From contig NC_047016.1 in assembly GCF_902652985.1 (NCBI RefSeq), positions 8,184,001-8,248,000 of the forward strand: 64,000 bases of DNA, written 5' to 3'. A model generated the notes under the pieces. The model saw only the letters and a program-made list of their open reading frames with translations. It did no database searches and was not told where the DNA came from. This DNA is from Pecten maximus. Taxonomy: Eukaryota. The translations under genes were made by a program, and so were the position numbers. Positions within the stretch are counted from its first letter, which is position 1. Every line of letters begins with the position of its first letter. Positions 27,177 through 40,406 of this stretch are shown in pieces.

Positions 27177-30100
27177 TCATACATCCATGCTATCGCCATT
27201 CTGTGACAGTTCATTTCCATTGTGATTCTCAGAAGAGCTTGCGGTGAGTGTTGATGATGAGGTTGAAAGGGGAGTTGATACAGACACCTCAGATGTTACA
27301 ATAGATTCGGGTGTTGTGGCAGCAGCACTACTTGTGGTCTGTCTTGGACTGGTTGTGGGGACACGTCGGTTGTGGATACTAGTAAGGTCTACCTTCCCCT
27401 GTAAGTGCTGAAGCAACAGTGGTCCATAGGCTACCTTCTTTTCCTCTTTGGTTTCATCTGACCAAGGAGAAGGAGATGATGATGAAGATGCAGATGACAT
27501 ATTCGAGGAAGACTGCTGTTGATCAAGCTGGATTTTGAGGTCAGAGTCTATTAGATGTTTAGAAGGCATCAGGTTCTGTAAAGAATCCTGTGTATAGGAC
27601 GACATTGGATTATCATCAGGCTCTGATCCTGAGAAAATGGACTCCGGAAGTTCTGGGTTTTTGGAAAGGAGATGTTGGGCCATTGCATCCCTGGCTTGCA
27701 AGGCGTCAAGGTGGGGAAGCAATATGTCCTTGGGCAACAACTCTGCCTCGTCAAGGTCAAGTTCATCATCAGTTTCCTACAACATACAAAATAAGTTTAG
27801 AATTATTAAGGTAGTTTTACACTAAATAAGATTTTCACATTACATGAAATTCAACTAGTATAATGATAGGCCAGCAAATGTGCTGAAACGGTTGACAGGT
27901 CCAAATGTAATAAATACCATTTTCAAAACAATGCACAATAATATTGTCAGTGATTGACAGCTATTTACATAAATGCAACAAAAAGCAGTTTCGAGCATTA
28001 TTTTTAATTTATTACAATAAGAAACTGTCACTTTCAAGCCTATCAATATGGACAAATCATGCAAATCTTCAGCAATGTTTTAGTAGATGCTTTACCTCTG
28101 GTTTGAGAGGAAACCTGGTCTCCATTTCCTTAAGTGAAGTGTGGAGTGGACAGCGTGCATTATCCTCTAGGGTGACCACAGGCTGACCACACCGTCCTCC
28201 TCCAAACTGACAAGGTCGGTACAACACCTGATACTGGTCAGTTAGAATGTCTAGGGTGATGTCAAGGTTAGCTAATGGTTATATATAGATATTTTTCTAG
28301 TGACTTTAGAAACCAGTGTATAGTCTGTATCTAAGCAATTGAAATATGAAGCAAAATTGTGGTAATATATATTGATATCAACTGTGTTGAATTTTAATAA
28401 AGCTACATGTATATGACATTTCTATTTGCAAAGAAAAGTTTGTCAAATGTATTCATATTTTCAGAGAGTTATTTAGATAATAGACTAGAAGAAAATATAA
28501 CTGAAATTCATAAAATTAATATGTTTGAGAACATACATAAGGAGCTTAATGCAAAAATTAAGATATCAAAGTCCAAATCATGTAAAAATTAGACTCCCTA
28601 ATACTTTTCATGCAAAATATCAGTAGTCTCTCAATACACACAAACTCTACAAATCTTCTTTAATATCTAACTTGTACACTGAGAGATAACAGCTAACAGT
28701 TTCTGTCCCTAGCCACTTAAAGGCAGAAGCATGAAAAAATCAAAGAAAGCTAATAACTTCAATTATCCTCTTCTCAATCTAATGCAAGTCTTGAAGATGT
28801 TTATGAATCGAAATAAATTGACTTGGTGGTCAAAAAGGAACTTAAGAGATATTCTGTATATAAAAAAGGATACGTTGCGAGCAATACTTGGACAGTGGAA
28901 GGGCTCTGTGTGAACACTTGTTGCCATCTTCTACATATACACACTTGGGGTAGGATGGTGGTCTGTAATTGGCCCCTTCTGACACAGCGATCCTCCTCTG
29001 TTTGGACTGACGATGTAGTAATGCCTCCTGTAATAGAAATGGGTGGAAAGCTACTGAAAAAATGTTCGCAAGCAACCAATGCATGATGTTACCTAAGGAA
29101 CTGAAGGCAATGACATAGACGGTCTGTTGCTTCTTCAAGACACCATTGTATTGTTAGCAGATTTGGTGCAGCGTCTCATCTGTCTGGTATATTTTTTTCA
29201 ATTTAAATGACTACTTCTCATTAACCAAAATGCTAAGAGTCGTGACATTTGGCCGATAGGTTTCCGGGATGAAAGTTTTGCCAAGAAATATGACCTTGAC
29301 ACATATTCAAGGTCAGAGGGGTCAAATTTGTTAGAATTTTCAAACAACTTCTTCTCATAAACTAAAAGGCCTAGGAGCGTGATATTTGGCTGTTAGATTG
29401 GTGGAAGATGAATCCTGACAAAGTTGGCGAGGAAAAGAAGAATGACCTTGACCTGTATTTAAGGTAAAAGTAGTTAAAACTTTCAAATGACTTGTTCTCA
29501 AAAACCAAAGGACCTAAAATGGAGCCCACACAATTTGCAAAAAGAAATGATCTTGACTTATATTCAAGATCAAAGAAGTCAAACTTTTTAAACATTAAAA
29601 TGGATTCTCCTCACAAACCAAAAGGCCTAGAATCATGATATTTAACTGTTTTAATAACTAAGTTACTTATTCTTAAAATATAAACATGTAATATCCATTG
29701 AAATAATTCAATAATTTCAAATGATTAAACAATCTGAATACCTGAATTATTATGCAAGATGTTATTTTGTTTTATGATAATTGGTTCAAGCAATTTTTCA
29801 TTATTATTTTACACAATATATGAGTTTGCCTCAGTCTGACGTGCTGTGTCAACATTAAATTCAGGAACAAATCTAATTTCTTCATCATAGGCAACCACAT
29901 AATAGTTTTAACCAGCTATTGGCATCTTTCGAATCTTTTTGCTTTCCAACTTTCAAGGCAGACTTCCTGTCTGTTCTAGGCACCATGCTTCTGCCTATTC
30001 ATATCATGGCTATTATTTAATGAACTTCATAATATTGGCTAATGTGTCAAGAGTAGAATAGTTTAAAATGATGCTGACTTTTCCATACTCCCTTTAGGCT

Positions 30101-33100
30101 CTGCCCCTCAGCCCCCTGGGGTCAGCTCATGATCAGCCATTTGCAACTTTTTGAATCCCCACCCCCTAGGGATGCCAGTTAAATGAGAGTGATATCGATC
30201 ACTAAGTTCCAGAGAAGTGCAGCAATGATACACTTCCCTCATGATATATGTATCACGATACTTGTCCCATGGTACAATACACATAAATTCATTAACATTT
30301 ATTTCGCAAATAATCAAAAGATTAATTTAAAACCATCTGTTTCAGTTAAACAGAACCCAAAATGTTTCCAGATATGTGATTTAAATGAAGTAGGTGGTTC
30401 TTTCAATCCTTAACAGTCGCTCAACGAAAGCGCTTCCGCTGTCATGCTGGTTTTTGGCAATACTAATTTCTGCACAGAAAACTGAAAATGGCCTGATCCA
30501 GAACAATGGGCATAATGTGATATGAGAAAAAAATAATCTGAACTGAACCGTGCCATTTACACAGCCCTAAAATGTCCCACGGATTACTGTTGCAGCACTT
30601 TTCCAGAGAATTAGTCGTTTATAGCTATATAGACAAATTACTCTGTTTAGGAATACCAGGTGAGCGATACAGGCCCATTGGGTCTTTTCCTCTTGTTTGT
30701 TATAACATTACAGCTGGATGTTATGACATTAGGATGCAATACCTGGTCAATAAAAACTCTTTCTTGATGTATAAGAATTTCACCCATTCTTGTGTGCTTT
30801 ATAAGTGTCTCTCAACAACAAACTTTTTGCCCTAATGAGTAGATGATGCTTACAATGTCTTGAATTTGAATCAGAGATGTGTTCATCTTTGTTAATATTA
30901 AAATTTTGGTTAAACATTGTGTTTGTAATACAGATCTATGTGATAAAACAATGACTCGGGATACATTTTTATCATATCTCTGTTCACTTTTAAGATAAAC
31001 TAAATTATTTTGTTTTTAAATTTAAACATTTAAAGATTATTGAAATAATTCACTGATTTCAAAGGATTAAACAAGATATCTGTAGATTATTATGTAAGAT
31101 GTTATTATGTTAATTGGTTCAAGCAATTTTTCATTATTATTTTACACTATACAAGAGTTTGCCTCAGTCTGACGTGCTGTGTCAACATTAAATTCAGGAA
31201 CAAATCTAATTTTTTCATCATAGGCAACCACATAAGAGTTTTAACCAGCTATTGGCATCTTTCGAATCTTTTTCCTTTCTAACTTTCAAGGCAGACTTCC
31301 TGTCTGTTCTAGGCACCATTCTTGTGCCTTTTCATATCATGGCTATTATCTAATGAACTTCATAATGTTGGCTAATGTGTCAAGAGTAGAATAGTTTAAA
31401 ATGATGCTTACTTTTCCATACTCCCTTTTGGCTGATCATGAGCCCCCTGAGGTCAGCTCATGATCAGCCATTTGTAACTTTTTGAATCCCCACCCCCAAG
31501 GGATGCCAGTTAAATAAGAGTGATATCGATCACTAAGTTCCAGAGAAGTGCAGCAATGATACACTTCCCTCATGATATATGTATCACGATACTTGTCCCA
31601 TGGTACGATACACATAAAATCAAAAGATTAATTAAAAACCATCTGTTTCAGTTAAACAGAACCCAAAATGTTTCCAGATATGTGATTTAAATGAAGTAGG
31701 TGGTTCTTTCAATCCTTAACAGTCACTCAACGAAAGCGCTTCCGCTGTCATGCTAGTTTTTGGCAATACTAATTTCTGCACAGAAAACTGAAAATGGCCT
31801 GATCCAGAACAATGGGCATAATGTGATATGAGAAAAAAATAATCTGAACTGAACCGTGCCATTTACACAGCCCTAAAATGTCCCACGGATTACTGTTGCA
31901 GCACTTTTCCAGAGAATAAGTCGTTTATAGCTATATAGACAAATTACTCTGTTTAGGAATACCAGGTGAGCGATGCGATCTAATGAGTAGATGATGCTTA
32001 CAATGTCTTGAATTTGAATCAGAGATGTGTTCATCTTTGTTAATATTTTAAAATTTTGGTTAAACATTGTGTTTGTAATACAAATCTATGTGATAAAACA
32101 ATGACTCGGGATACATTTTTATCATATCTTTGTTCACTTAAGTTTTAATATCAACTAGATTATTTTGTTTTTAAATTTAAACATTTAAAGATTATTGAAA
32201 CAATTCAATGATTTCAAAGGATTAAACAAGATATCTGTAGATTATTATGTAAGATGTTATTATGTTAATTGGTTCAAGCAATTTTTCATTATTATTTTAC
32301 ACTATACAAGAGTTTGCCTCAGTCTGACGTGCTGTGTCAACATTAAATTCAGGAACAAATCTAATTTTTTCATCATAGGCAACCACATAAGAGTTTTAAC
32401 CAGCTATTGGCATCTTTCGAATCTTTTTCCTTTCTAACTTTCAAGGCAGACTTCCTGTCTGTTCTAGGCACCATTCTTGTGCCTTTTCATATCATGGCTA
32501 TTATCTAATGAACTTCATAATGTTGGCTAATGTGTCAAGAGTAGAATAGTTTAAAATGATGCTTACTTTTCCATACTCCCTTTTGGCTGATCATGAGCCC
32601 CCTGAGGTCAGCTCATGATCAGCCATTTGTAACTTTTTGAATCCCCACCCCCAAGGGATGCCAGTTAAATAAGAGTGATATCGATCACTAAGTTCCAGAG
32701 AAGTGCAGCAATGATACACTTCCCTCATGATATATGTATCACGATACTTGTCCCATGGTACGATACACATAAAATCAAAAGATTAATTTAAAACCATCTG
32801 TTTCAGTTAAACAGAACCCAAAATGTTTCCAGATATGTGATTTAAATGAAGTAGATGGTTCTTTCAATCCTTAACAGTCACTCAACGAAAGCGCTTCCGC
32901 TGTCATGCTAGTTTTTGGCAATACTAATTTCTGCACAGAAAACTGAAAATGGCCTGATCCAGAACAATGGGCATAATGTGATATGAGAAAAAAATAATCT
33001 GAACTGAACCGTGCCATTTACACAGCCCTAAAATGTCCCACGGATTACTGTTGCAGCACTTTTCCAGAGAATAAGTCGTTTATAGCTATATAGACAAATT

Positions 33101-36100
33101 ACTCTGTTTAGGAATACCAGGTGAGCGATGCGATCTAATGAGTAGATGATGCTTACAATGTCTTGAATTTGAATCAGAGATGTGTTCATCTTTGTTAATA
33201 TTTTAAAATTTTGGTTAAACATTGTGTTTGTAATACAAATCTATGTGATAAAACAATGACTCGGGATACATTTTTATCATATCTTTGTTCACTTAAGTTT
33301 TAATATCAACTAGATTATTTTGTTTTTAAATTTAAACATTTAAAGATTATTGAAACAATTCAATGATTTCAAAGGATTAAACAAGATATCTGTAAATTAT
33401 TATGTAAGATGTTATTATGTTAATTGGTTCAAGCAATTTTTCATTATTATTTTACCATACAAGAGTTTGCCTCAGTCTGACGTGCTGTGTCAACATTAAA
33501 TTCAGGAACAAATCTAATTTTTTCATCATAGGCAACCACATAAGAGTTTTAACCAGCTATTGGCATCTTCCGAATCTTTTTCCTTTCTAACTTTCAAGGC
33601 AGACTTCCTGTCTGTTCTAGGCACCATTCTTGTGCCTTTTCATATCATGGCTATTATCTAATGAACTTCATAATGTTGGCTAATGTGTCAAGAGTAGAAT
33701 AGTTTAAAATGATGCTTACTTTTCCATACTCCCTTTTGGCTGATCATGAGCCCCCTGGGGTCAGCTCATGATCAGCCATTTGTAACTTTCTGAATCCCAA
33801 CCCCCTAAGGATGCCAGTTAAATAAGAGTGATATCGATCACCAAGTTCCAGAGCAGTGCAGCAATGATACACTTCCCTCATGATATATGTATCACGATAC
33901 TTGTCCCATGGTACGATACACATAAAATCAAAAGATTAATTTAAAACCATCTGTTTCAGTTGAACAGAACCCAAAATGTTTCCAGATATGTGATTTAAAT
34001 GAAGTAGGTGGTTCTTTCAATCCTTAACAGTCACTCAACGAAAGAGTTTCCGCTGTCATGCTAGTTTTTGGCAATACTAATTTCTGCACAGAAAACTGAA
34101 AATGGCTTGATCCAGAACAATGGGCATAATGTGATATGAGAAAAAAATAATCTGAACAGAACCGTGCCATTTACACAGCCCTAAAATGTCCCACGGATTA
34201 CTGTTGCAGCACTTTTCCAGAGAATTAGTCGTTTATAGCTATATAGACAAATTACTCTTAGGAATACCAGGTGAGCTAGATGAGTAGATGATGCTTACAA
34301 TGTCTTGAATTTGAATCAGAGATGTGTTCATCTTTGTTAATATTTTAAAATTTTGGTTAAACATTGTGTTTGTAATACAGATCTATGTGATAAAACAATG
34401 ACTCAGGATACATTTTTATCATATCTCAGTTCACTTTTAATAAGTTTTAATATCAACTAGATTATTTTGTTTTTAAATTTAAACATTTAAAGATTATTGA
34501 AACAATTCAATGATTTCAAAGGATTAAACAAGATATCTGTAAATTATTATGTAAGATGTTATTATGTTAATTGGTTCAAACAATTTTTCATTATTATTTT
34601 ACACTATACATGAGTCTGCCTCAGTCTGACGTGCTTTGTCAACATTAAATTCAGGAACAAATCTAATTTTTTCATCATAGGCAACCACATAAGAGTTTTA
34701 ACCAGCTATTGGCATCTTTCAAATCTTTTTGCTTTCCAACTTTCAAGGCAGACTTCCTGTCTTCATTTAGTAAACTTCATAATGTTGGCTGATGTGTCAA
34801 AAGTAGACCAGTTTAAAATGATGCTCACCTTTCCATGCCTTTTGTGGTATCTCTTGAGAGCCTTCAGTTTTGTGTATTTGTCTCTTGTTTCTGGACCTTC
34901 TTTGTAAACAGATAAACTGCCTAGAAATATACAAAGTTATTAACTAATCAAGTTTTAGGGTTTAAACAAAACTTTAAGCCATAGGCCCATCAGTATAACT
35001 GAGCAAACATACAGTAGAGATTCAATGCAGAATAATGTATAGAGAACGAATTCCTTTTGATATACAATATACAATTATATCAGATCAAACACATTCAAGC
35101 AGTTCTTAACCAATTATATTCAAAAATATATTTACCTCATGCACATAGTTCATTAATGCTTAGAGAATGTAGAAGCTGGATAGCCTTAAAACTGAAGCAG
35201 TTTTCCAGTAATATCTTTTTGCTATTTTTGTTAATTTGTTACAAGTTAGCCAACTACACAATCAACCAATGTATTTTCAGAAAATTGTTTTCCAGTAAAA
35301 CAATTGCTTTTTACCTGTTCATACTCTTATCGAACCTCGCAAAAAGGTTTCAAATGAATATAGCTACCTAGATTTTATGTGGTGGAAAAGGTGACAAGAA
35401 GTGTAATATGTCGAGCTTTAAAACCTTCTTAGTAAAAGTAAAATGGAAGTTGTTAATGTGAAAACCGACCAGAGTAATTTATGTCCCATTTATTTGTCTG
35501 TGTAATATTCAAGGATTCTTCAATTTTGTATGCGACAAAAAACATTTCTCCCAAGACTTTATCACTACATGTATGCTTTTATAAGATAGATAGCACAACC
35601 TTTTGCTACTTATCTTTAATTACACATCTTATTTATGGCTTTTCCAGAAAAATACAGCTTCCCCACCACAGGCAGTGTGCAATATAAATATTACCTAGAG
35701 ATTCTTTTTCCTGTTTGTGAGTGTGCAAGTACTTTCGTCTTTTTTCCTTCATGATGTGCTGAAGTCGTTTGAACTGGTCAATGTAGAGTGACTGTAGTCG
35801 TATGAGTTTGTCCCGCATTACCAGAGCCACCTCCTCGGCAGTGTACACACCGGCATGTCTAAAAACAAATTGAAAATATTAGAGATCTTCACTTCATTTG
35901 TCCTGACAGGCTGAAGTCACAATGTCTTAAACAATATATTAATTATATATTAGTTTCTAGACGTAGATTAAGTACGTTTAGTTTGGCTAGACTAATATAA
36001 ATGACTCCATCTTTGTGCTTTATTAAAGAATATAAATAGATTCTGTAATTTCAAACACTTTTAATTATAATTTATATCATTTTAGTTTTGATGCAAAATA

Positions 36101-39100
36101 CATCTATTTGAATAATTATCTTGGGAATATCATTTAACCATGACTTTTAATTATATATATAGTGACTTAGACAAATATTAATAACACGAAAGCAGAGGAT
36201 GATGATTACATTCAGACCATTGATTAGAGTAGGCAGTCTTACTTGAGTAGGTCCTCCTGATCACTGTCGATACTCTCTGGGTCACTGTCCCCATCCCCTC
36301 GCCATGCTTGGTCCACTAGAGGAGGCTCCAAGTCAGAATCCTCAGAACTAGCATACTCTATATACACACAAAAATAGATATAAAACCCCTAACATACTTT
36401 CATTATTTACTGCCAAAGGACAGAAAACATTGCTGAATAGGAAAGAGATATTATCAGGGAAATAATACACAGTAATAACATAATGTTCTAGGAAATAAAA
36501 TTATGTATACATGTATTACAATGGATTACATGGTGGAATATATATAACAAAGGCGAGAGAACATTGGAAAGCAACAAATTCTGCAATGTAACTTCAGTTA
36601 TTTTCATTTGAATACAACTTATTACTTTCGTTCAGGAGGAACTTCATTATTTTACAGTATCAGTATGTGTATGTATTATGAATTTGCCTCAGCCTGACGT
36701 GCTGTGTCTTCATCAAATTCAGAAGCAAATCTTAATGACTTCATCATAGGCATAAACATAATTACAACATAACCTGACAAAAAAGACACTTGTTTACTGC
36801 ATGCTCTCAATGAAATGAATCGATGATGTGTTCAATTATGGTCAATACTGTGGTTACATTGTATATTTCATAAAGATCTATGCATTAAATCAACAGCTTT
36901 CACTACACAATCTTTTACTTTAATACATCTTTGCTTTAAATCTTAATTTGATTTCTGATGTCTACTTAAAGAATTCTAAAATCTCAAATTATATAAAGTT
37001 CCTGCAAGATTTCAGTATTATTTTACGTTTGCCTCAGCCTGACGTGCTGTGTCAACCTTTAATTCAGAAGCAAATCTTATGGCATCATCACAGGCAAAAT
37101 ATCTCTTGAAGCAAGGGCTGTTTTGTCTAATGTTCGGAACTCACTAATCATGCAGATTTTCCAGAATATATCTGTATCATGCTAACTGGTATACAAGAAC
37201 TTTTCCAGCATTGTTCCAAAACAAGGTGGGGAAGGACATATTGATACATAACATAACTTATAGCATATTTGTGTACAATAAATAAACACAATGTTTAATC
37301 AAAGTCATAGGAATATAAGATAAGGTCACAGTGACCTACATACATAGTATACTGTAGTACCTAAGGAGTTTGATGACTTAGGACAAATGACATTAGATAT
37401 ATGGGAGCCTAAGTTAAGTCAACCATGCACAAAATGAAACTTAAGTACAGTGGACCCTCGATAATCCGAACACCTTTGTTCCCAGTCCAAACCGTCCGGA
37501 TTACGAGTTTTCCGGACTGCCGAATTTTGTGTACCAGGTCAAAAAAATTGTCGTGTAAGAGTTATCTCCCTTGATTATATACAATCCGGGACGTTTCATA
37601 AACACGTCTAATTGTCAGACTTTTTAACAATAAATATACTTATGTTTCTGATGTTTTTAAAAGAACATGTAAAGTGAAAGTTGTTTTATTTATAGCGGGC
37701 ATTTGTGACCTACAAACAACACACATGTGTCACGTCCCGGAGGTTCACAAACAAGTAGAAATTACAAACGTTAAATACCTTAAATAAAATACACGGATTT
37801 TACAACTTACCGTCAGTCCATGTTTTTTTTTAATGATTTTTACGTACCAGAAACCCCAAGCTATCTATTTAAAAGTATGCGACACCAGCGAGAACTACCC
37901 AAGATGTCCGATAACTATTAAACCCGTATTCACTTAACAATGTGACGCTTAGTTAAGTATCAGACGACTATTGACTAATTTGTGTGTAATCAACCCAGTT
38001 CTTGTGATCACTGCTTAATACGTAAATGTGTATGTAATTAATAACATGCATCTTTCAATGAGTCGTCGTTTCACGTAACGGTGTTACAAGCCGATATCCG
38101 TGTTTACCCAATACAAGTGTTAATGATGTTAATTACTGATCATAAATTTATTACATGTATTTGAGATTGATTAATTATTGTATCACGTACTGTATGTTTG
38201 TGCATAAATTCTGTAACATTTAGGTCGTAGAGAAAAAGCAATGTACCGTTATAAAAACAAAAGCTACACATTGTAACACAGGTAAACACCCGGGGCTATG
38301 ACCTGGCAGCGGTCGCTATGACTACGCACAGTGTCAAGCGATAGTCTGTACAGCTGTCGACACGGGTGACTTGCACCGACATTTTTTTCTCCTCGTGGTG
38401 AAAAAATCATCCGGATTATTGAGGGAAATTTACTAATGAAAAGTACGTTCTGTTCCCAAAATGGGCTTCCGGAATCGGAATCCGAATTTCCGGACTGGTG
38501 AGTACAAATAACGTTACGGAAATCCGTTCCGGTGCATTTCCATCCGGACTGTGAGTTTTCCGGACTATCGGCGTCCGGATTATTGCGGGTCCACTGTAGT
38601 GTAGTTGAAAGTACAGCATGTTGACCTACTTATCAAACAAAAATGGTAATTTTGCCAATACTTTCTAACCAAGGACGTAGGAAGAAAATAATAAAAATTT
38701 AAAGTTTTGCCTCAGACTGACGTGCTGTTATCCACAAATTATTCAGGTGCAAATCTATTTTTCATCACAGGCAAAGCTTTGATTCAACAAAAACACGTCC
38801 TTGATACATAAGCAGTATACCTAAACAGCATCCAAATATAAACATTATCCTAACAAGATACTAACCTAGAACTTTGCTGGCTACACTATCGGAGTAGCCC
38901 TTGATTCGCCGACTGTCTTGCACACCTTTAAAGTGATCTAGGTCCTCTAGCAGACTTTCAGCTGTTTCCTTGGGCTGTGCTTTTCGGGTGGATCTCTGCC
39001 GTAGTAATACTGCTCTCCGTGAATGTTCTGCACAGTAACTGTAAAAAGCCAATAGCAAGTTAATTCAAGTGACACTTAACAAGACGAATAGATTTGTACT

Positions 39101-39845
39101 TTGCAATCTCAACCAATATTAGATATATTGTTGAAAAATAATTTTACATCTTATGCCTCATTAACAGGTAAAATCACATGTACTATACATGCCGCCTTCG
39201 AAAGCAATTTAAAATGTAAAGGAAAATACACTGCCACATGAGCTAATATTCCGGTACCTGCTAATCTTTGTTTTCCTCATGTCAGTAAAAACTAGTATTA
39301 AAGTCAGATTGCTAAGTGAATGATACAGTAAAAACACACATAAATGTGGTGTTAAGACATGTCAAATCTCAATAAAAATTTGCCAGTCAACTAGTACAGT
39401 GTTGTCTACTTGTAGGCTGCCACTATATATATATACAAATAATTTGGCTGATGCATGAAATTGTATTATTGCATCATTATTTTTTCTAATATTTCAGTGT
39501 GTTCCAATAGAATGCTATAAACGTGACAATATCTAACACATCTACTAAACTGAATGATGGCGTTGGAAAATTATCAAAAGCCATTTTAATCTTTTTATAA
39601 GAACCTTACCCATCTTTCCTATCTGCTTTTGGTGCAGCATTGAGACAACGTTTTCCGTTTTTGCTTGAAATGAAAGCACACTGTTTGAATGGTGCATTCT
39701 TGTCCTCAAGAATGTGTCTTATACAATAGTCATATCCATCCAGTCTGTTGTGCATGCAGGTCCTGTGAGTGTAATTACAGAAAACTCCTTCCACTGGCTG
39801 GCGAATTCGCCGCGGGTTGGGAATCTGGTTTTTGGACTTAATCAT
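27177..39845 (-). CDS. KANSL2: KAT8 regulatory NSL complex subunit 2, 8 coding exons, 562 aa
   Basis: Exons (5'->3') 39845-39610, 39038-38866, 36357-36243, 35858-35695, 34920-34829, 29027-28874, 28250-28096, 27776-27177; phases consistent, 1689 nt. Motifs: [85 protein letters not shown], second C3Hx-type finger. A non-coding first exon probably lies near 43.6 kb (not defined). Confidence 0.93.
28251..28873 (-). other. U12-type (minor spliceosome) GT-AG intron in KANSL2
   Basis: Donor C|GTATCCTTTT at 28873; branch-site-like AACCTTGAC ~10 nt upstream of the acceptor CCCTAG| at 28251; no polypyrimidine tract. Confidence 0.9.
29826..29894 (-). ncRNA. Box C/D snoRNA, copy A (predicted LSU rRNA guide, snR72-like)
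   Basis: Minus strand: TTGCCT stem, box C ATGATGA, box D' CTGA, guide ACAGCACGTCAGA, box D CTGA, GGCAA stem; sense to the host gene KANSL2. Confidence 0.8.
31159..31227 (-). ncRNA. Box C/D snoRNA, copy B
   Basis: Same architecture as copy A; boxes, stem and guide intact. Confidence 0.8.
32314..32382 (-). ncRNA. Box C/D snoRNA, copy C
   Basis: Same architecture as copy A; boxes, stem and guide intact. Confidence 0.8.
33467..33535 (-). ncRNA. Box C/D snoRNA, copy D
   Basis: Same architecture as copy A; boxes, stem and guide intact. Confidence 0.8.
34616..34684 (-). ncRNA. Box C/D snoRNA, copy E
   Basis: Same architecture; one substitution outside the rRNA-complementary core. Confidence 0.78.
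36684..36753 (-). ncRNA. Box C/D snoRNA, diverged paralog F
   Basis: TGCCT-ATGATGA...AGATTTGCTT-CTGA-AT-TTGATGA (near-canonical C')-AGACACAGCACGTCAGG-CTGA-GGCA; flanks largely unrelated to the other copies. Confidence 0.82.
37028..37098 (-). ncRNA. Box C/D snoRNA, diverged paralog G
   Basis: TTTGCCT-GTGATGA...AGATTTGCTT-CTGA...ACAGCACGTCAGG-CTGA-GGCAAA. Confidence 0.82.
37448..38596. mobile_element. Non-autonomous Tc1/pogo-like DNA transposon
   Basis: TIRs CAGTGGACCCTCGATAATCCG / CGGATTATTGCGGGTCCACTG, TA on both sides, subterminal TCCGGA repeats, no transposase ORF. Confidence 0.88.
38706..38775 (-). ncRNA. Box C/D snoRNA, diverged paralog H
   Basis: TTTGCCT-GTGATGA...AGATTTGCAC-CTGA...ACAGCACGTCAGT-CTGA-GGCAAA. 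Confidence 0.82.
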
Positions 39846-40406
39846 TTTTTCTTTCTGCTGACAAAAAATATGCATTTATATAGTGTATATATATAATAAA
39901 AAACATTTATGTAAAAAAAAAAAAAAAAAAAGTATTGTAAGTACTGTAAATGAACATTATTGTTTATGTGCATGCAAAAATAGTACCCTGTTTAAGTTAA
40001 AAGTTGATCAATAGGTTTCAATAAATTTAAGAATTAATTGCAAATAATCTTGAAACATTCCGAGCCGTTCTGATACGATTGTATAAAATTGGAAGTAAGC
40101 TGATCTAGCTTGGATACAAATATAATTTGTCTGTGTTTTTTTCCCGGTAGATGCTTTTGCTTTTGATACAGTTGGGACTGTGTGACCTTATTTATGCTAA
40201 CACTCCAGTATGCACTAAATGTAGATAATTTTATCGTTTGTTAGGCCTTATTCAATTTTTTATGCAGAAAATTTGTACACTGACAAGCATAACAAAATTA
40301 TTAAATGCCAAAACTAGAGCTGCTAATAAAGGCTTGAATTAGGAATGTATCCTATTGAAACTGTAATAACTACTTAAGCGTGTAAGGTAAATTTTACTTC
40401 AAAATA

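What the first reader, a model, noticed from the sequence alone, without database searches (positions are those of the whole stretch)
29826..38775. Eight-member intronic box C/D snoRNA family in KANSL2, predicted to guide an snR72-type LSU rRNA methylation
Seen: eight ~70-nt elements, all sense to KANSL2, each with a terminal TGCC/GGCA stem, box C (RTGATGA), D' (CTGA) and D (CTGA). In the diverged copies F, G and H the boxes, stem and two antisense elements are conserved while spacers and flanks differ, which points to selection. Recalled knowledge: the D guide GCACGUCAG is complementary to the conserved LSU rRNA segment CUGACGUGC(AAAUC). The D+5 rule selects the A of CUGAC in all eight copies, and only the D+1 position varies (A/G/T). 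This A corresponds to yeast 25S Am876 (snR72; plant snoR72Y). I do not recall this site in human or fly methylation maps, so this may be an unannotated lophotrochozoan retention or re-invention. Vertebrate KANSL2 is a snoRNA host too, but of H/ACA SNORA2-family RNAs, so host status would be conserved with different cargo (inference).
Basis: partly seen in the sequence, partly recalled or inferred. Interest (0 to 1): 0.85.

Follow-up and report, generated by a model that had tools for sequence, protein, structure and literature searches.

The report
Eight-copy intronic methylation-guide snoRNA cluster
Two introns of a bivalve KANSL2 gene carry eight copies of a well-formed, selectively conserved box C/D snoRNA whose guide points at a large-subunit rRNA adenosine that is methylated in yeast and plants but not in the human or fly maps consulted; expression as a small RNA and the methylation itself are still unproven.

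Summary
Eight elements of 68-70 nt lie on the minus strand, sense to KANSL2. Each has a terminal stem (5 bp, 4 bp in F), box C, D', a degenerate C' and box D.

- **Location:** H, G and F lie in intron 2. E to A lie in intron 5, inside a 1.15-kb tandem duplication.
- **Copy number:** they are the only copies in the 918-Mb genome, so this is not a dispersed repeat.
- **Selection:** between the diverged copies the bodies are 72-86% identical and the flanks are at random level. Substitutions avoid the stem, boxes and D guide (2/34 versus 21/37 columns, p = 3e-6).
- **Target:** the D guide pairs over 9-10 bp with this genome's own LSU rRNA and selects A1075. By constant-offset mapping this is yeast 25S Am876 (snR72) and Arabidopsis Am885 (snoR72Y). 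The human and fly maps consulted list no such site.
- **Rfam:** nothing reaches a gathering score. The best match is plant snoZ122 (31.6 versus 38 bits), which has the same guide.
- **RNA evidence:** spliced RNA contigs confirm the intron positions. One library shows a high-depth G-to-F species ending at F's 3' end, which resembles a sno-lncRNA.

Six KANSL2 loci from other molluscs and amphioxus lack the snoRNA, so host conservation is not supported.

Verdict: a new member of a known kind, of moderate interest.

The parts
38707..38774 (-). snoRNA copy H, 68 nt. It begins about 91 nt downstream of the exon 2 donor. Its D' element AGAUUUGCAC is the longest of the eight.
   Evidence: Covariance model R1 gives 79.8 bits. 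Its best Rfam match is snoZ122 at 31.6 bits, below that family's gathering score of 38.
37029..37097 (-). snoRNA copy G, in intron 2.
   Evidence: 91.2 bits.
36684..36753 (-). snoRNA copy F, in intron 2. Its stem has 4 bp.
   Evidence: 87.7 bits. A contig from run X4 ends at 36683, one base past its terminal stem.
36683..37097 (-). Candidate G-to-F RNA resembling a sno-lncRNA: two snoRNA ends with about 275 nt between them.
   Evidence: Run X4 has a contig at 36683-37056 with depth 243, against an exon depth of 92 and flanking intron bins at 0. Run X9 has a contig at 36715-37086 with depth 5.7. The 5' end is not resolved.
34616..34684 (-). snoRNA copy E. It is the first in intron 5 and begins 144 nt downstream of the true exon 5 donor.
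33467..33535 (-). snoRNA copy D.
   Evidence: In run X5 the depth over the copy is about 23-32, against 0-4 in neighbouring bins.
32314..32382 (-). snoRNA copy C.
31159..31227 (-). snoRNA copy B.
29826..29894 (-). snoRNA copy A. It is the last in intron 5, about 800 nt upstream of exon 6.
29637..34902 (-). Tandem duplication with spacings of 1149-1333 nt that carries copies A to E. Each unit also copies the last roughly 10 nt of exon 5 and its GT donor: GTGAGC in E, GTAAGC in D, C and B, and GTCAGC in A.
   Evidence: Apart from an old dispersed repeat of about 360 nt, the unit is specific to this locus.
36358..38865 (-). KANSL2 intron 2 (2508 nt), holding H, G and F.
   Evidence: The spliced joint 36357/38866 is seen in all four runs.
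29028..34827 (-). KANSL2 intron 5 (about 5.8 kb), holding E, D, C, B and A.
   Evidence: In three runs the contigs that end at 34828 continue with the first letters of exon 6, which begins at 29027 after TTACAG.
27180..39875 (-). Host gene KANSL2. Exons 2-5 are at 38866-39039, 36243-36357, 35694-35858 and 34828-34919. Exon 1 ends near 39609, exon 6 starts at 29027, and the last coding exon lies near 27180-27776.
   Evidence: Pfam zf-C3Hc3H in exon 1 and in exons 6/7. Named KANSL2 relatives. Splice joints.

Best explanation
These are eight paralogous genes for one box C/D snoRNA. They are transcribed as part of KANSL2 introns 2 and 5 and released from the spliced introns.

**Proposed mechanism**
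- Box C (RUGAUGA) and box D (CUGA), closed by the UUGCC/GGCAA stem, would form the kink-turn that assembles the snoRNP with fibrillarin.
- The element GCACGUCAG next to box D pairs with LSU rRNA 1071/1072-1080 (UCUGACGUGC).
- By the D+5 rule the snoRNP would 2'-O-methylate A1075. This is the counterpart of yeast 25S Am876 and Arabidopsis 25S Am885.
- The invariant D' element AGAUUUG(C) most likely adds pairing to the rRNA directly next to the target (1079-1085), supporting the short 9-10 bp guide. Alternatively it guides a second site.

**History**
Copy number grew by local duplication, in two phases: an older one giving H, G and F, and a recent 1.15-kb tandem amplification giving A to E.

**Shown versus inferred**
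- Shown: the anatomy, the restriction to this locus, the pattern of selection, the complementarity to the genome's own rRNA, the intron positions, and RNA contigs over the copies.
- Inferred: snoRNP assembly, discrete mature RNAs, and the methylation.
For: - **Anatomy:** all eight copies have the canonical layout.
- **Copy number:** only eight copies exist in 918 Mb, all on one strand at one locus.
- **Selection:** bodies are 72-86% identical while flanks are at the random level. Variable columns number 2 of 34 in the stem, boxes and D guide, against 21 of 37 elsewhere (Fisher p = 3e-6).
- **Target:** the D guide gives 9-10 contiguous pairs to this genome's LSU rRNA and nothing comparable elsewhere in 18S, 5.8S or 28S.
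- **Mapping:** A1075 corresponds to yeast A876 at a constant offset of 199. The same offset places yeast 867, 898 and 908 on G, U and G, as expected.
- **Known site:** it is methylated in yeast (snR72), in Arabidopsis (snoR72Y a-d) and in Pyrococcus abyssi (PMC8053091, PMC8583080, PMC11542601).
- **Rfam:** the best match is snoZ122, whose consensus guide AUUUGCACGUCAGUCUGA is the same.
- **Other organisms:** metagenomes hold many snoRNAs with this guide, and one close homologue scores 34-36 bits.
- **RNA:** spliced contigs place the copies inside introns. Depth over G-F, D and E exceeds that of the neighbouring intron.
- **Short guides:** snoRNAs with short guides commonly carry extra pairing next to the target (PMC3116282).
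Against: - No Rfam family reaches its gathering score.
- The guide duplex is short (9-10 bp), whereas the plant and fungal-type snoRNAs pair over 13-14 nt.
- Only assembled contigs were available, so no 70-nt product, RNA end or expression level could be read. The libraries probably lose RNAs this small.
- Three and five snoRNAs per intron is unusual for animals. Exonucleolytic trimming alone would not free the inner copies.
- The C' box is degenerate.
- KANSL2 loci of five other molluscs lack the snoRNA, so there is no cross-species conservation to lean on.
- The D' element fits three rRNA sites about equally well.
Confidence: 0.7

Rival explanations
1. Only some copies work. H, G and F (or a subset of them) would be the functional genes. 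The five near-identical tandem copies A to E would be a young structural duplication of intron sequence that adds little or no mature snoRNA, because inner copies of a multi-snoRNA intron are not released.
For: - A to E are 96-100% identical, flanks included, so selection on them cannot be read.
- Their D' element is weaker (GUUC instead of GCAC or GCUU) at all three candidate sites.
- No splice joint inside the array was seen.
- E has an A-for-C change just upstream of the guide and a G-for-A change in the stem.
Against: - In run X5 the depth over copies D and E is about 23-32, against 0-4 in the neighbouring intron.
- All five copies keep intact boxes, stem and guide.
Confidence: 0.15
2. It is a real snoRNA with a different job. 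The match to A1075 would not lead to methylation, and the RNA would act as an orphan guide on another RNA through the conserved D' element, or as a chaperone of rRNA folding.
For: - The D duplex is only 9-10 bp.
- The D' core AGAUUUG is as invariant as the D guide, and its target is unresolved.
- The site is not listed as methylated in the human and fly maps (PMC8583080, PMC11014333).
Against: - The D guide is invariant in all diverged copies and falls exactly on a site methylated in yeast, plants and an archaeon.
- The same guide core occurs in many snoRNAs of other eukaryotes.
Confidence: 0.1
3. The elements are fragments of a transposon or another dispersed repeat that resemble a snoRNA by chance.
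For: - The intron holds true repeats: a 1.15-kb element with terminal inverted repeats, with about 1000 genomic candidates, lies between H and G.
- An old 360-nt repeat lies inside the tandem unit.
Against: - The snoRNA itself occurs only eight times, at one locus and on one strand.
- Its substitutions avoid the functional positions.
- It lies outside the dispersed parts.
Confidence: 0.02

Closest known systems
Plant snoZ122 (Rfam RF00343) and Arabidopsis snoR72Y a-d
   Same: - Both are box C/D snoRNAs with the guide next to box D, sharing the core GCACGUCAG-N-CUGA.
- Both select the same LSU adenosine (Arabidopsis Am885).
- Both are multi-copy genes.
   Different: - Copy H scores 31.6 bits, below the gathering score of 38. 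The other copies score 25 bits or less.
- The plant guide pairs over about 13 nt (AUUUGCACGUCAG); here it pairs over 9-10 nt.
- The plant RNAs are longer (about 80-90 nt) and lie in polycistronic clusters rather than in introns of a protein-coding gene.
Yeast snR72
   Same: The predicted target is the same nucleotide, 25S Am876, by constant-offset mapping.
   Different: - No sequence match was found at E up to 10 in the Rfam scan.
- snR72 is cut out of the polycistronic snR72-78 transcript.
- Its D' guide is described as inactive and not conserved (PMC3116282), whereas here the D' element is invariant.
Mammalian sno-lncRNAs (Prader-Willi region and RPL13A; PMC4234469)
   Same: More than one snoRNA lies in a single intron, and in one library the sequence between two of them (G to F) is covered at higher depth than the host exons.
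   Different: - Those are documented only in human, rhesus and mouse, with both ends mapped and known protein partners.
- Here only contigs are available. The 3' end coincides with snoRNA F and the 5' end is unresolved.
Vertebrate KANSL2 as host of H/ACA snoRNAs (SNORA2A and relatives)
   Same: The host gene is orthologous.
   Different: - The snoRNA class and target differ.
- Six invertebrate KANSL2 loci show no snoRNA, so the two hostings appear to be independent.
Unidentified metagenome contig L044 (two copies in tandem units of about 490 nt)
   Same: - The layout is the same at 70 nt.
- The stem is UUGUC/GACAG and the C' box is UGGUGA.
- It shares the identical stretch ACAGCACGUCAGUCUGAG.
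- Model R1 gives 34-36 bits.
   Different: The D' element is unrelated, and both the organism and the host gene are unknown.

Membership tests
Box C/D snoRNA (class) | Box C RUGAUGA near the 5' end and box D CUGA near the 3' end | tested here: met
   All eight copies have both boxes.
Box C/D snoRNA (class) | Terminal stem that brings boxes C and D together | tested here: met
   The stem is 5 bp UUGCC/GGCAA. F has 4 bp, E has an outer U-G pair, and G and H have 6 bp.
Box C/D snoRNA (class) | Internal D' and C' boxes | tested here: met
   D' CUGA is invariant. C' follows the form NGNNGA (UGUUGA, UGAAGA, GGUUGA, UGUGGA) at a fixed position.
Box C/D snoRNA (class) | Guide next to box D or D' complementary to a target RNA, with the fifth pair on the modified nucleotide | tested here: met
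   The guide makes 9-10 contiguous pairs with the genome's own LSU rRNA, and the fifth position falls on A1075.
Box C/D snoRNA (class) | Stable discrete RNA bound by fibrillarin, Nop56, Nop58 and Snu13 | tested here: inconclusive
   RNA contigs cover the copies at raised depth. Contigs cannot show size or ends, and protein binding cannot be tested with these tools.
Rfam snoZ122 (RF00343) | Score at or above the gathering threshold of 38 bits | tested here: not met
   The best score is 31.6 bits (H). A to D score 25.1 bits.
Rfam snoZ122 (RF00343) | D guide GCACGUCAG-U-CUGA | tested here: met
   The alignment shows the identical guide.
snR72 / snoR72Y functional group (guides of the Am876/Am885 site) | The guide selects the LSU adenosine equivalent to yeast A876 | tested here: met
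   Offset mapping was checked on four modified positions. Site equivalences come from PMC8583080 and PMC11542601.
snR72 / snoR72Y functional group (guides of the Am876/Am885 site) | The site is actually 2'-O-methylated in this species | not testable with these tools
   This needs RiboMeth-seq, RTL-P or an RNase H assay.
sno-lncRNA | Two snoRNAs in one intron | tested here: met
   Intron 2 holds H, G and F. Intron 5 holds E to A.
sno-lncRNA | Accumulating RNA whose two ends are the snoRNAs | tested here: inconclusive
   The run X4 contig at 36683-37056 has depth 243 and ends at F's 3' end. The 5' end inside G is not resolved.

The most novel reading that the evidence does not exclude
A bivalve would have kept, or regained, the ancient LSU methylation known as Am876 in yeast, Am885 in plants and Am881 in Pyrococcus, which the human and fly maps lack. 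It would drive this methylation with an eight-copy snoRNA whose recognition of the rRNA is split between two elements. The short D guide would select the nucleotide, and the conserved D' element would pair with the rRNA stretch directly beside it. Because the copies share introns, the locus would also produce sno-lncRNA-type RNAs. That would be the first case outside mammals.
Probability: 0.3. Interest if true: 0.6.

Novelty: new member of a known kind. Interest (0 to 1): 0.45.

Why it matters
- **rRNA methylation maps:** few animal maps were found here, and none for a mollusc. This locus predicts one specific site, LSU A1075, that the human and fly maps consulted do not list but that yeast, plants and an archaeon do have. 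A single RiboMeth-seq run on scallop RNA would test it, and would show how changeable the animal set of methylated sites is.
- **snoRNA processing:** the arrangement of three and five snoRNAs per intron gives a natural case for asking how an invertebrate processes several snoRNAs from one intron, and whether sno-lncRNAs exist outside mammals.
- **Gene family growth:** the young 1.15-kb tandem array shows a snoRNA family expanding by intron duplication rather than by retroposition.

Tried and rejected
- **Rfam at gathering score, whole window:** nothing found. At E up to 10 there were only sub-threshold box C/D families and no snR72.
- **Transposon reading:** rejected by genome-wide counts.
- **Conserved host with a conserved snoRNA:** searched in the KANSL2 loci of Pinctada imbricata, Ostrea edulis, Solemya velum, Mercenaria mercenaria, Haliotis cracherodii and Branchiostoma lanceolatum. 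A guide pattern, a generic C/D finder, covariance model R1 and Rfam all found nothing. The one weak R1 match (L014 4007-4057, 15.9 bits) has no box D or stem.
- **Loci not on record:** those of Mizuhopecten yessoensis, Liolophura sinensis and Owenia fusiformis. The closest scallop could therefore not be compared.
- **Cryptic exons that would give each tandem copy its own intron:** no splice joint inside 33400-34828 in four runs. Exon 5 joins exon 6 directly.
- **Single target for the D' element:** LSU 1081, 1648 and 3422 fit about equally well, so none was chosen.
- **SNORD24 and SNORD38/snR61 sub-threshold hits:** followed up. LSU 1648 lies four nucleotides upstream of the U24-type C site, a position I do not know to be methylated. 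That placement rests on my recollection of the yeast 25S sequence, not on a tool result.
- **Papers:** the search for snoR72Y/Z122 gave only unrelated papers. The supplementary tables of the fly map are not held.
Full report
**What is there**

Eight elements of 68-70 nt lie on the minus strand between 29826 and 38774. Read 5' to 3', each has these parts in order:
- a 5' stem arm, UUGCC;
- box C (A/G)UGAUGA;
- a 15-18 nt spacer that ends in the invariant AGAUUUG plus three variable letters;
- D' CUGA;
- a 6-nt loop;
- a degenerate C' box (UGUUGA, UGAAGA, GGUUGA or UGUGGA);
- a stretch ending in (A)CAGCACGUCAG plus one variable letter;
- box D CUGA;
- the 3' stem arm, GGCAA.

The motif GCACGTCAGNCTGA occurs 8 times in the window, against 0.01 expected by chance. 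In the whole 918-Mb assembly, two patterns were searched: the guide with the stem, and box C followed by the guide. Each finds the same eight places and no others, all on one strand. A generic C/D finder run on the minus strand of the window returns only these copies.

**Host gene and intron positions**

The minus strand encodes a protein with two zf-C3Hc3H domains. [quoted passage not shown]

Contigs of four public runs of the same organism carry spliced joints at 36357/38866, 35858/36243 and 34919/35694. In three runs the contigs ending at 34828 continue with the first letters of the exon that begins at 29027. It follows that:
- H, G and F share intron 2 (2508 nt);
- E, D, C, B and A share intron 5 (about 5.8 kb);
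- no joint was seen inside the array.

**The two layers of duplication**

A to E sit in a tandem unit with spacings of 1149-1333 nt and 92-100% identity. The unit begins about 10 nt inside exon 5, so each unit copies the GT donor: GTGAGC in E, GTAAGC in D, C and B, and GTCAGC in A. This agrees with the scan's other note on this stretch. Apart from an old dispersed repeat of about 360 nt, the unit is found nowhere else in the genome.

F, G and H are older copies. Their bodies are 72-86% identical to each other and to A and E, while their 100-nt flanks are at the random level.

**Selection**

Across A, F, G and H I defined the functional columns in advance as both stem arms, box C, D', D and the nine guide letters. 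Of these 34 columns, 2 vary: the outermost stem pair in F, and the A/G of box C, both of which are permitted. Of the other 37 columns, 21 vary (Fisher p = 3e-6). This is the pattern expected of a working box C/D snoRNA, not of a decaying repeat.

**Target of the D guide**

I took one rDNA unit from the same genome and located the LSU, SSU and 5.8S rRNAs with Rfam. The D guide makes 9 pairs (H) or 10 pairs with LSU 1071/1072-1080, UCUGACGUGC. In A to E all ten are Watson-Crick; in F and G one is G-U. The next-best site in any rRNA has 7-8 pairs including wobbles. The fifth position falls on A1075.

I anchored on the conserved block GACCCGAAAGAUGGUGAACUAUGCC and used an offset of 199 from yeast numbering. 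With that offset, yeast positions 867, 876, 898 and 908 fall on G, A, U and G. These are the nucleotides known to be methylated at those positions in yeast (site list in PMC8053091). The anchoring of that block to yeast G805/A807/A817 is from my own knowledge of the snR39/snR59/snR60 sites. The four-fold agreement is the check on it.

What the papers say about this site:
- yeast Am876 is guided by snR72;
- Arabidopsis Am885 is guided by snoR72Y a-d, and the table in PMC8583080 has no human counterpart;
- PMC11542601 lists the site in tomato, tobacco, yeast and Pyrococcus abyssi (Am881), again with no human entry;
- the fly map has Gm1005, Am1007, Am1017 and Gm1108, which are yeast positions plus 200, but nothing at 1076 (PMC11014333).

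**Relation to known families**

No Rfam family reaches its gathering score. The best sub-threshold match is plant snoZ122 to copy H, at 31.6 bits against 38. Its consensus guide AUUUGCACGUCAGUCUGA is the same.

A pattern scan of metagenome contigs returned at least 120 contigs. Part of these must be chance, since I estimate on the order of a hundred chance matches for this pattern in a collection that size. Forty-seven matches have a flanking stem of 4 bp or more. Many of those are typical plant or fungal-type snoRNAs in clusters of 2-4 copies, with the longer guide (G)AUUUGCACGUCAG.

Only one contig, L044, is a close relative. It has two 70-nt copies in tandem units of about 490 nt, a stem UUGUC/GACAG, and the stretch ACAGCACGUCAGUCUGAG identical to H. 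Model R1 scores them at 34-36 bits. Its organism is unknown.

**The D' element**

AGAUUUG is invariant in all eight copies and always occupies positions 4-10 upstream of D'. Three rRNA sites fit it:

| Site | Position relative to known features | Pairing |
|---|---|---|
| LSU 1079-1085, GCAAAUC | Next to the D target and overlapping it by 2-4 nt | 9 Watson-Crick pairs in H; 7 in F and G; 7 with one wobble in A to E |
| LSU 1644-1653, with A1648 at the fifth pair | Four nucleotides before the U24-type C site (placement from my recollection of the yeast 25S sequence) | 10 pairs in H and G; 14 with wobbles in F; 8 in A to E |
| LSU 3422 | A variable 3' region | 7 pairs (8-9 with a wobble in A-E and H) |

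GCAAAUC occurs only once in the three rRNAs.

Placed end to end, H's D' element AGAUUUGCAC and the D guide GCACGUCAG spell the long guide seen in the plant and fungal-type relatives. PMC3116282 reports that the snoRNAs with the shortest guides carry extra pairing next to the target. It also reports that such pairing may overlap the guide site by one to five nucleotides and can raise methylation up to five-fold.

On that basis I favour an accessory-pairing role, but this is inference. A second methylation at A1081 or A1648 is not excluded.

**RNA evidence**

Only assembled contigs were available, so sizes, ends and levels cannot be read directly.
- Run X4 carries spliced KANSL2 contigs, so it is RNA. 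It has a 376-nt contig at 36683-37056 with depth 243. The exon contig has depth 92, and the intron bins on either side are at 0.
- The low end of that contig, 36683, is one base beyond F's terminal stem.
- Run X9 (RNA-seq by its record) has a contig at 36715-37086 with depth 5.7, against 19.4 for exons.
- In run X5 the bins over copies D and E have depth 23, against 0-4 in most neighbouring intron bins (all).

This fits RNA protected by snoRNP ends. For G to F it fits the sno-lncRNA type defined in mammals for introns with two snoRNAs (PMC4234469). It is suggestive only.

**Other species**

The KANSL2 loci of Pinctada imbricata, Ostrea edulis, Solemya velum, Mercenaria mercenaria, Haliotis cracherodii and Branchiostoma lanceolatum were fetched with their introns. 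None has the guide pattern, a canonical C/D candidate on the sense strand, a hit of model R1 below E = 0.1, or any Rfam family at gathering score.

Human KANSL2 hosts SNORA2A (PMC6466398). The hosting here looks lineage-specific.

Whole genomes of other molluscs could not be searched. The nearest scallop locus is not on record. Retention and re-invention therefore cannot be told apart.

**Verdict**

The most likely reading, at about 0.7, is a family of genuine intronic box C/D snoRNA genes that guide 2'-O-methylation of LSU A1075, the Am876/Am885 site.

It is a new member of a known kind and the functional counterpart of snR72, snoR72Y and Z122. It falls below Rfam's threshold for any family.

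Three side features raise the interest somewhat:
- a predicted methylation site that the human and fly maps lack;
- several snoRNAs per intron, with a possible sno-lncRNA;
- a conserved D' element complementary to the rRNA directly beside the D target.

Noticed in passing
window 37440-38600: A 1.15-kb element with 37-nt terminal inverted repeats (81% complementary) is inserted in intron 2 between snoRNAs H and G. The genome holds about 1000 candidate copies, many at 93-98% identity. RNA contigs cover it at depths of hundreds to thousands. It looks like a young non-autonomous DNA transposon.
   Followed up: partly
L044 1-1438 (metagenome contig Ga0224511_10274610): An unidentified eukaryote carries two copies of a close homologue of this snoRNA in tandem units of about 490 nt. 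Each copy is preceded by a conserved block of about 110 nt that may be a non-coding host exon. The organism was not identified.
   Followed up: partly
window 31547-31905 and the matching part of each tandem unit: About 360 nt inside the 1.15-kb unit match hundreds of places in the genome at 70-80% identity. This is an old dispersed repeat that was duplicated along with the snoRNA.
   Followed up: partly
window 37026: Three runs (X1, X4, X9) show an AT insertion immediately 3' of snoRNA G relative to the assembly. It is probably a polymorphism.
   Followed up: no
G000 contigs C679, C1629, C3906 and others: The rDNA units repeat every 7.2 kb or so, which is short for an animal. The 52 copies of the target motif found are spread over many small unplaced contigs, with one on chromosome-scale contig C16.
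   Followed up: no
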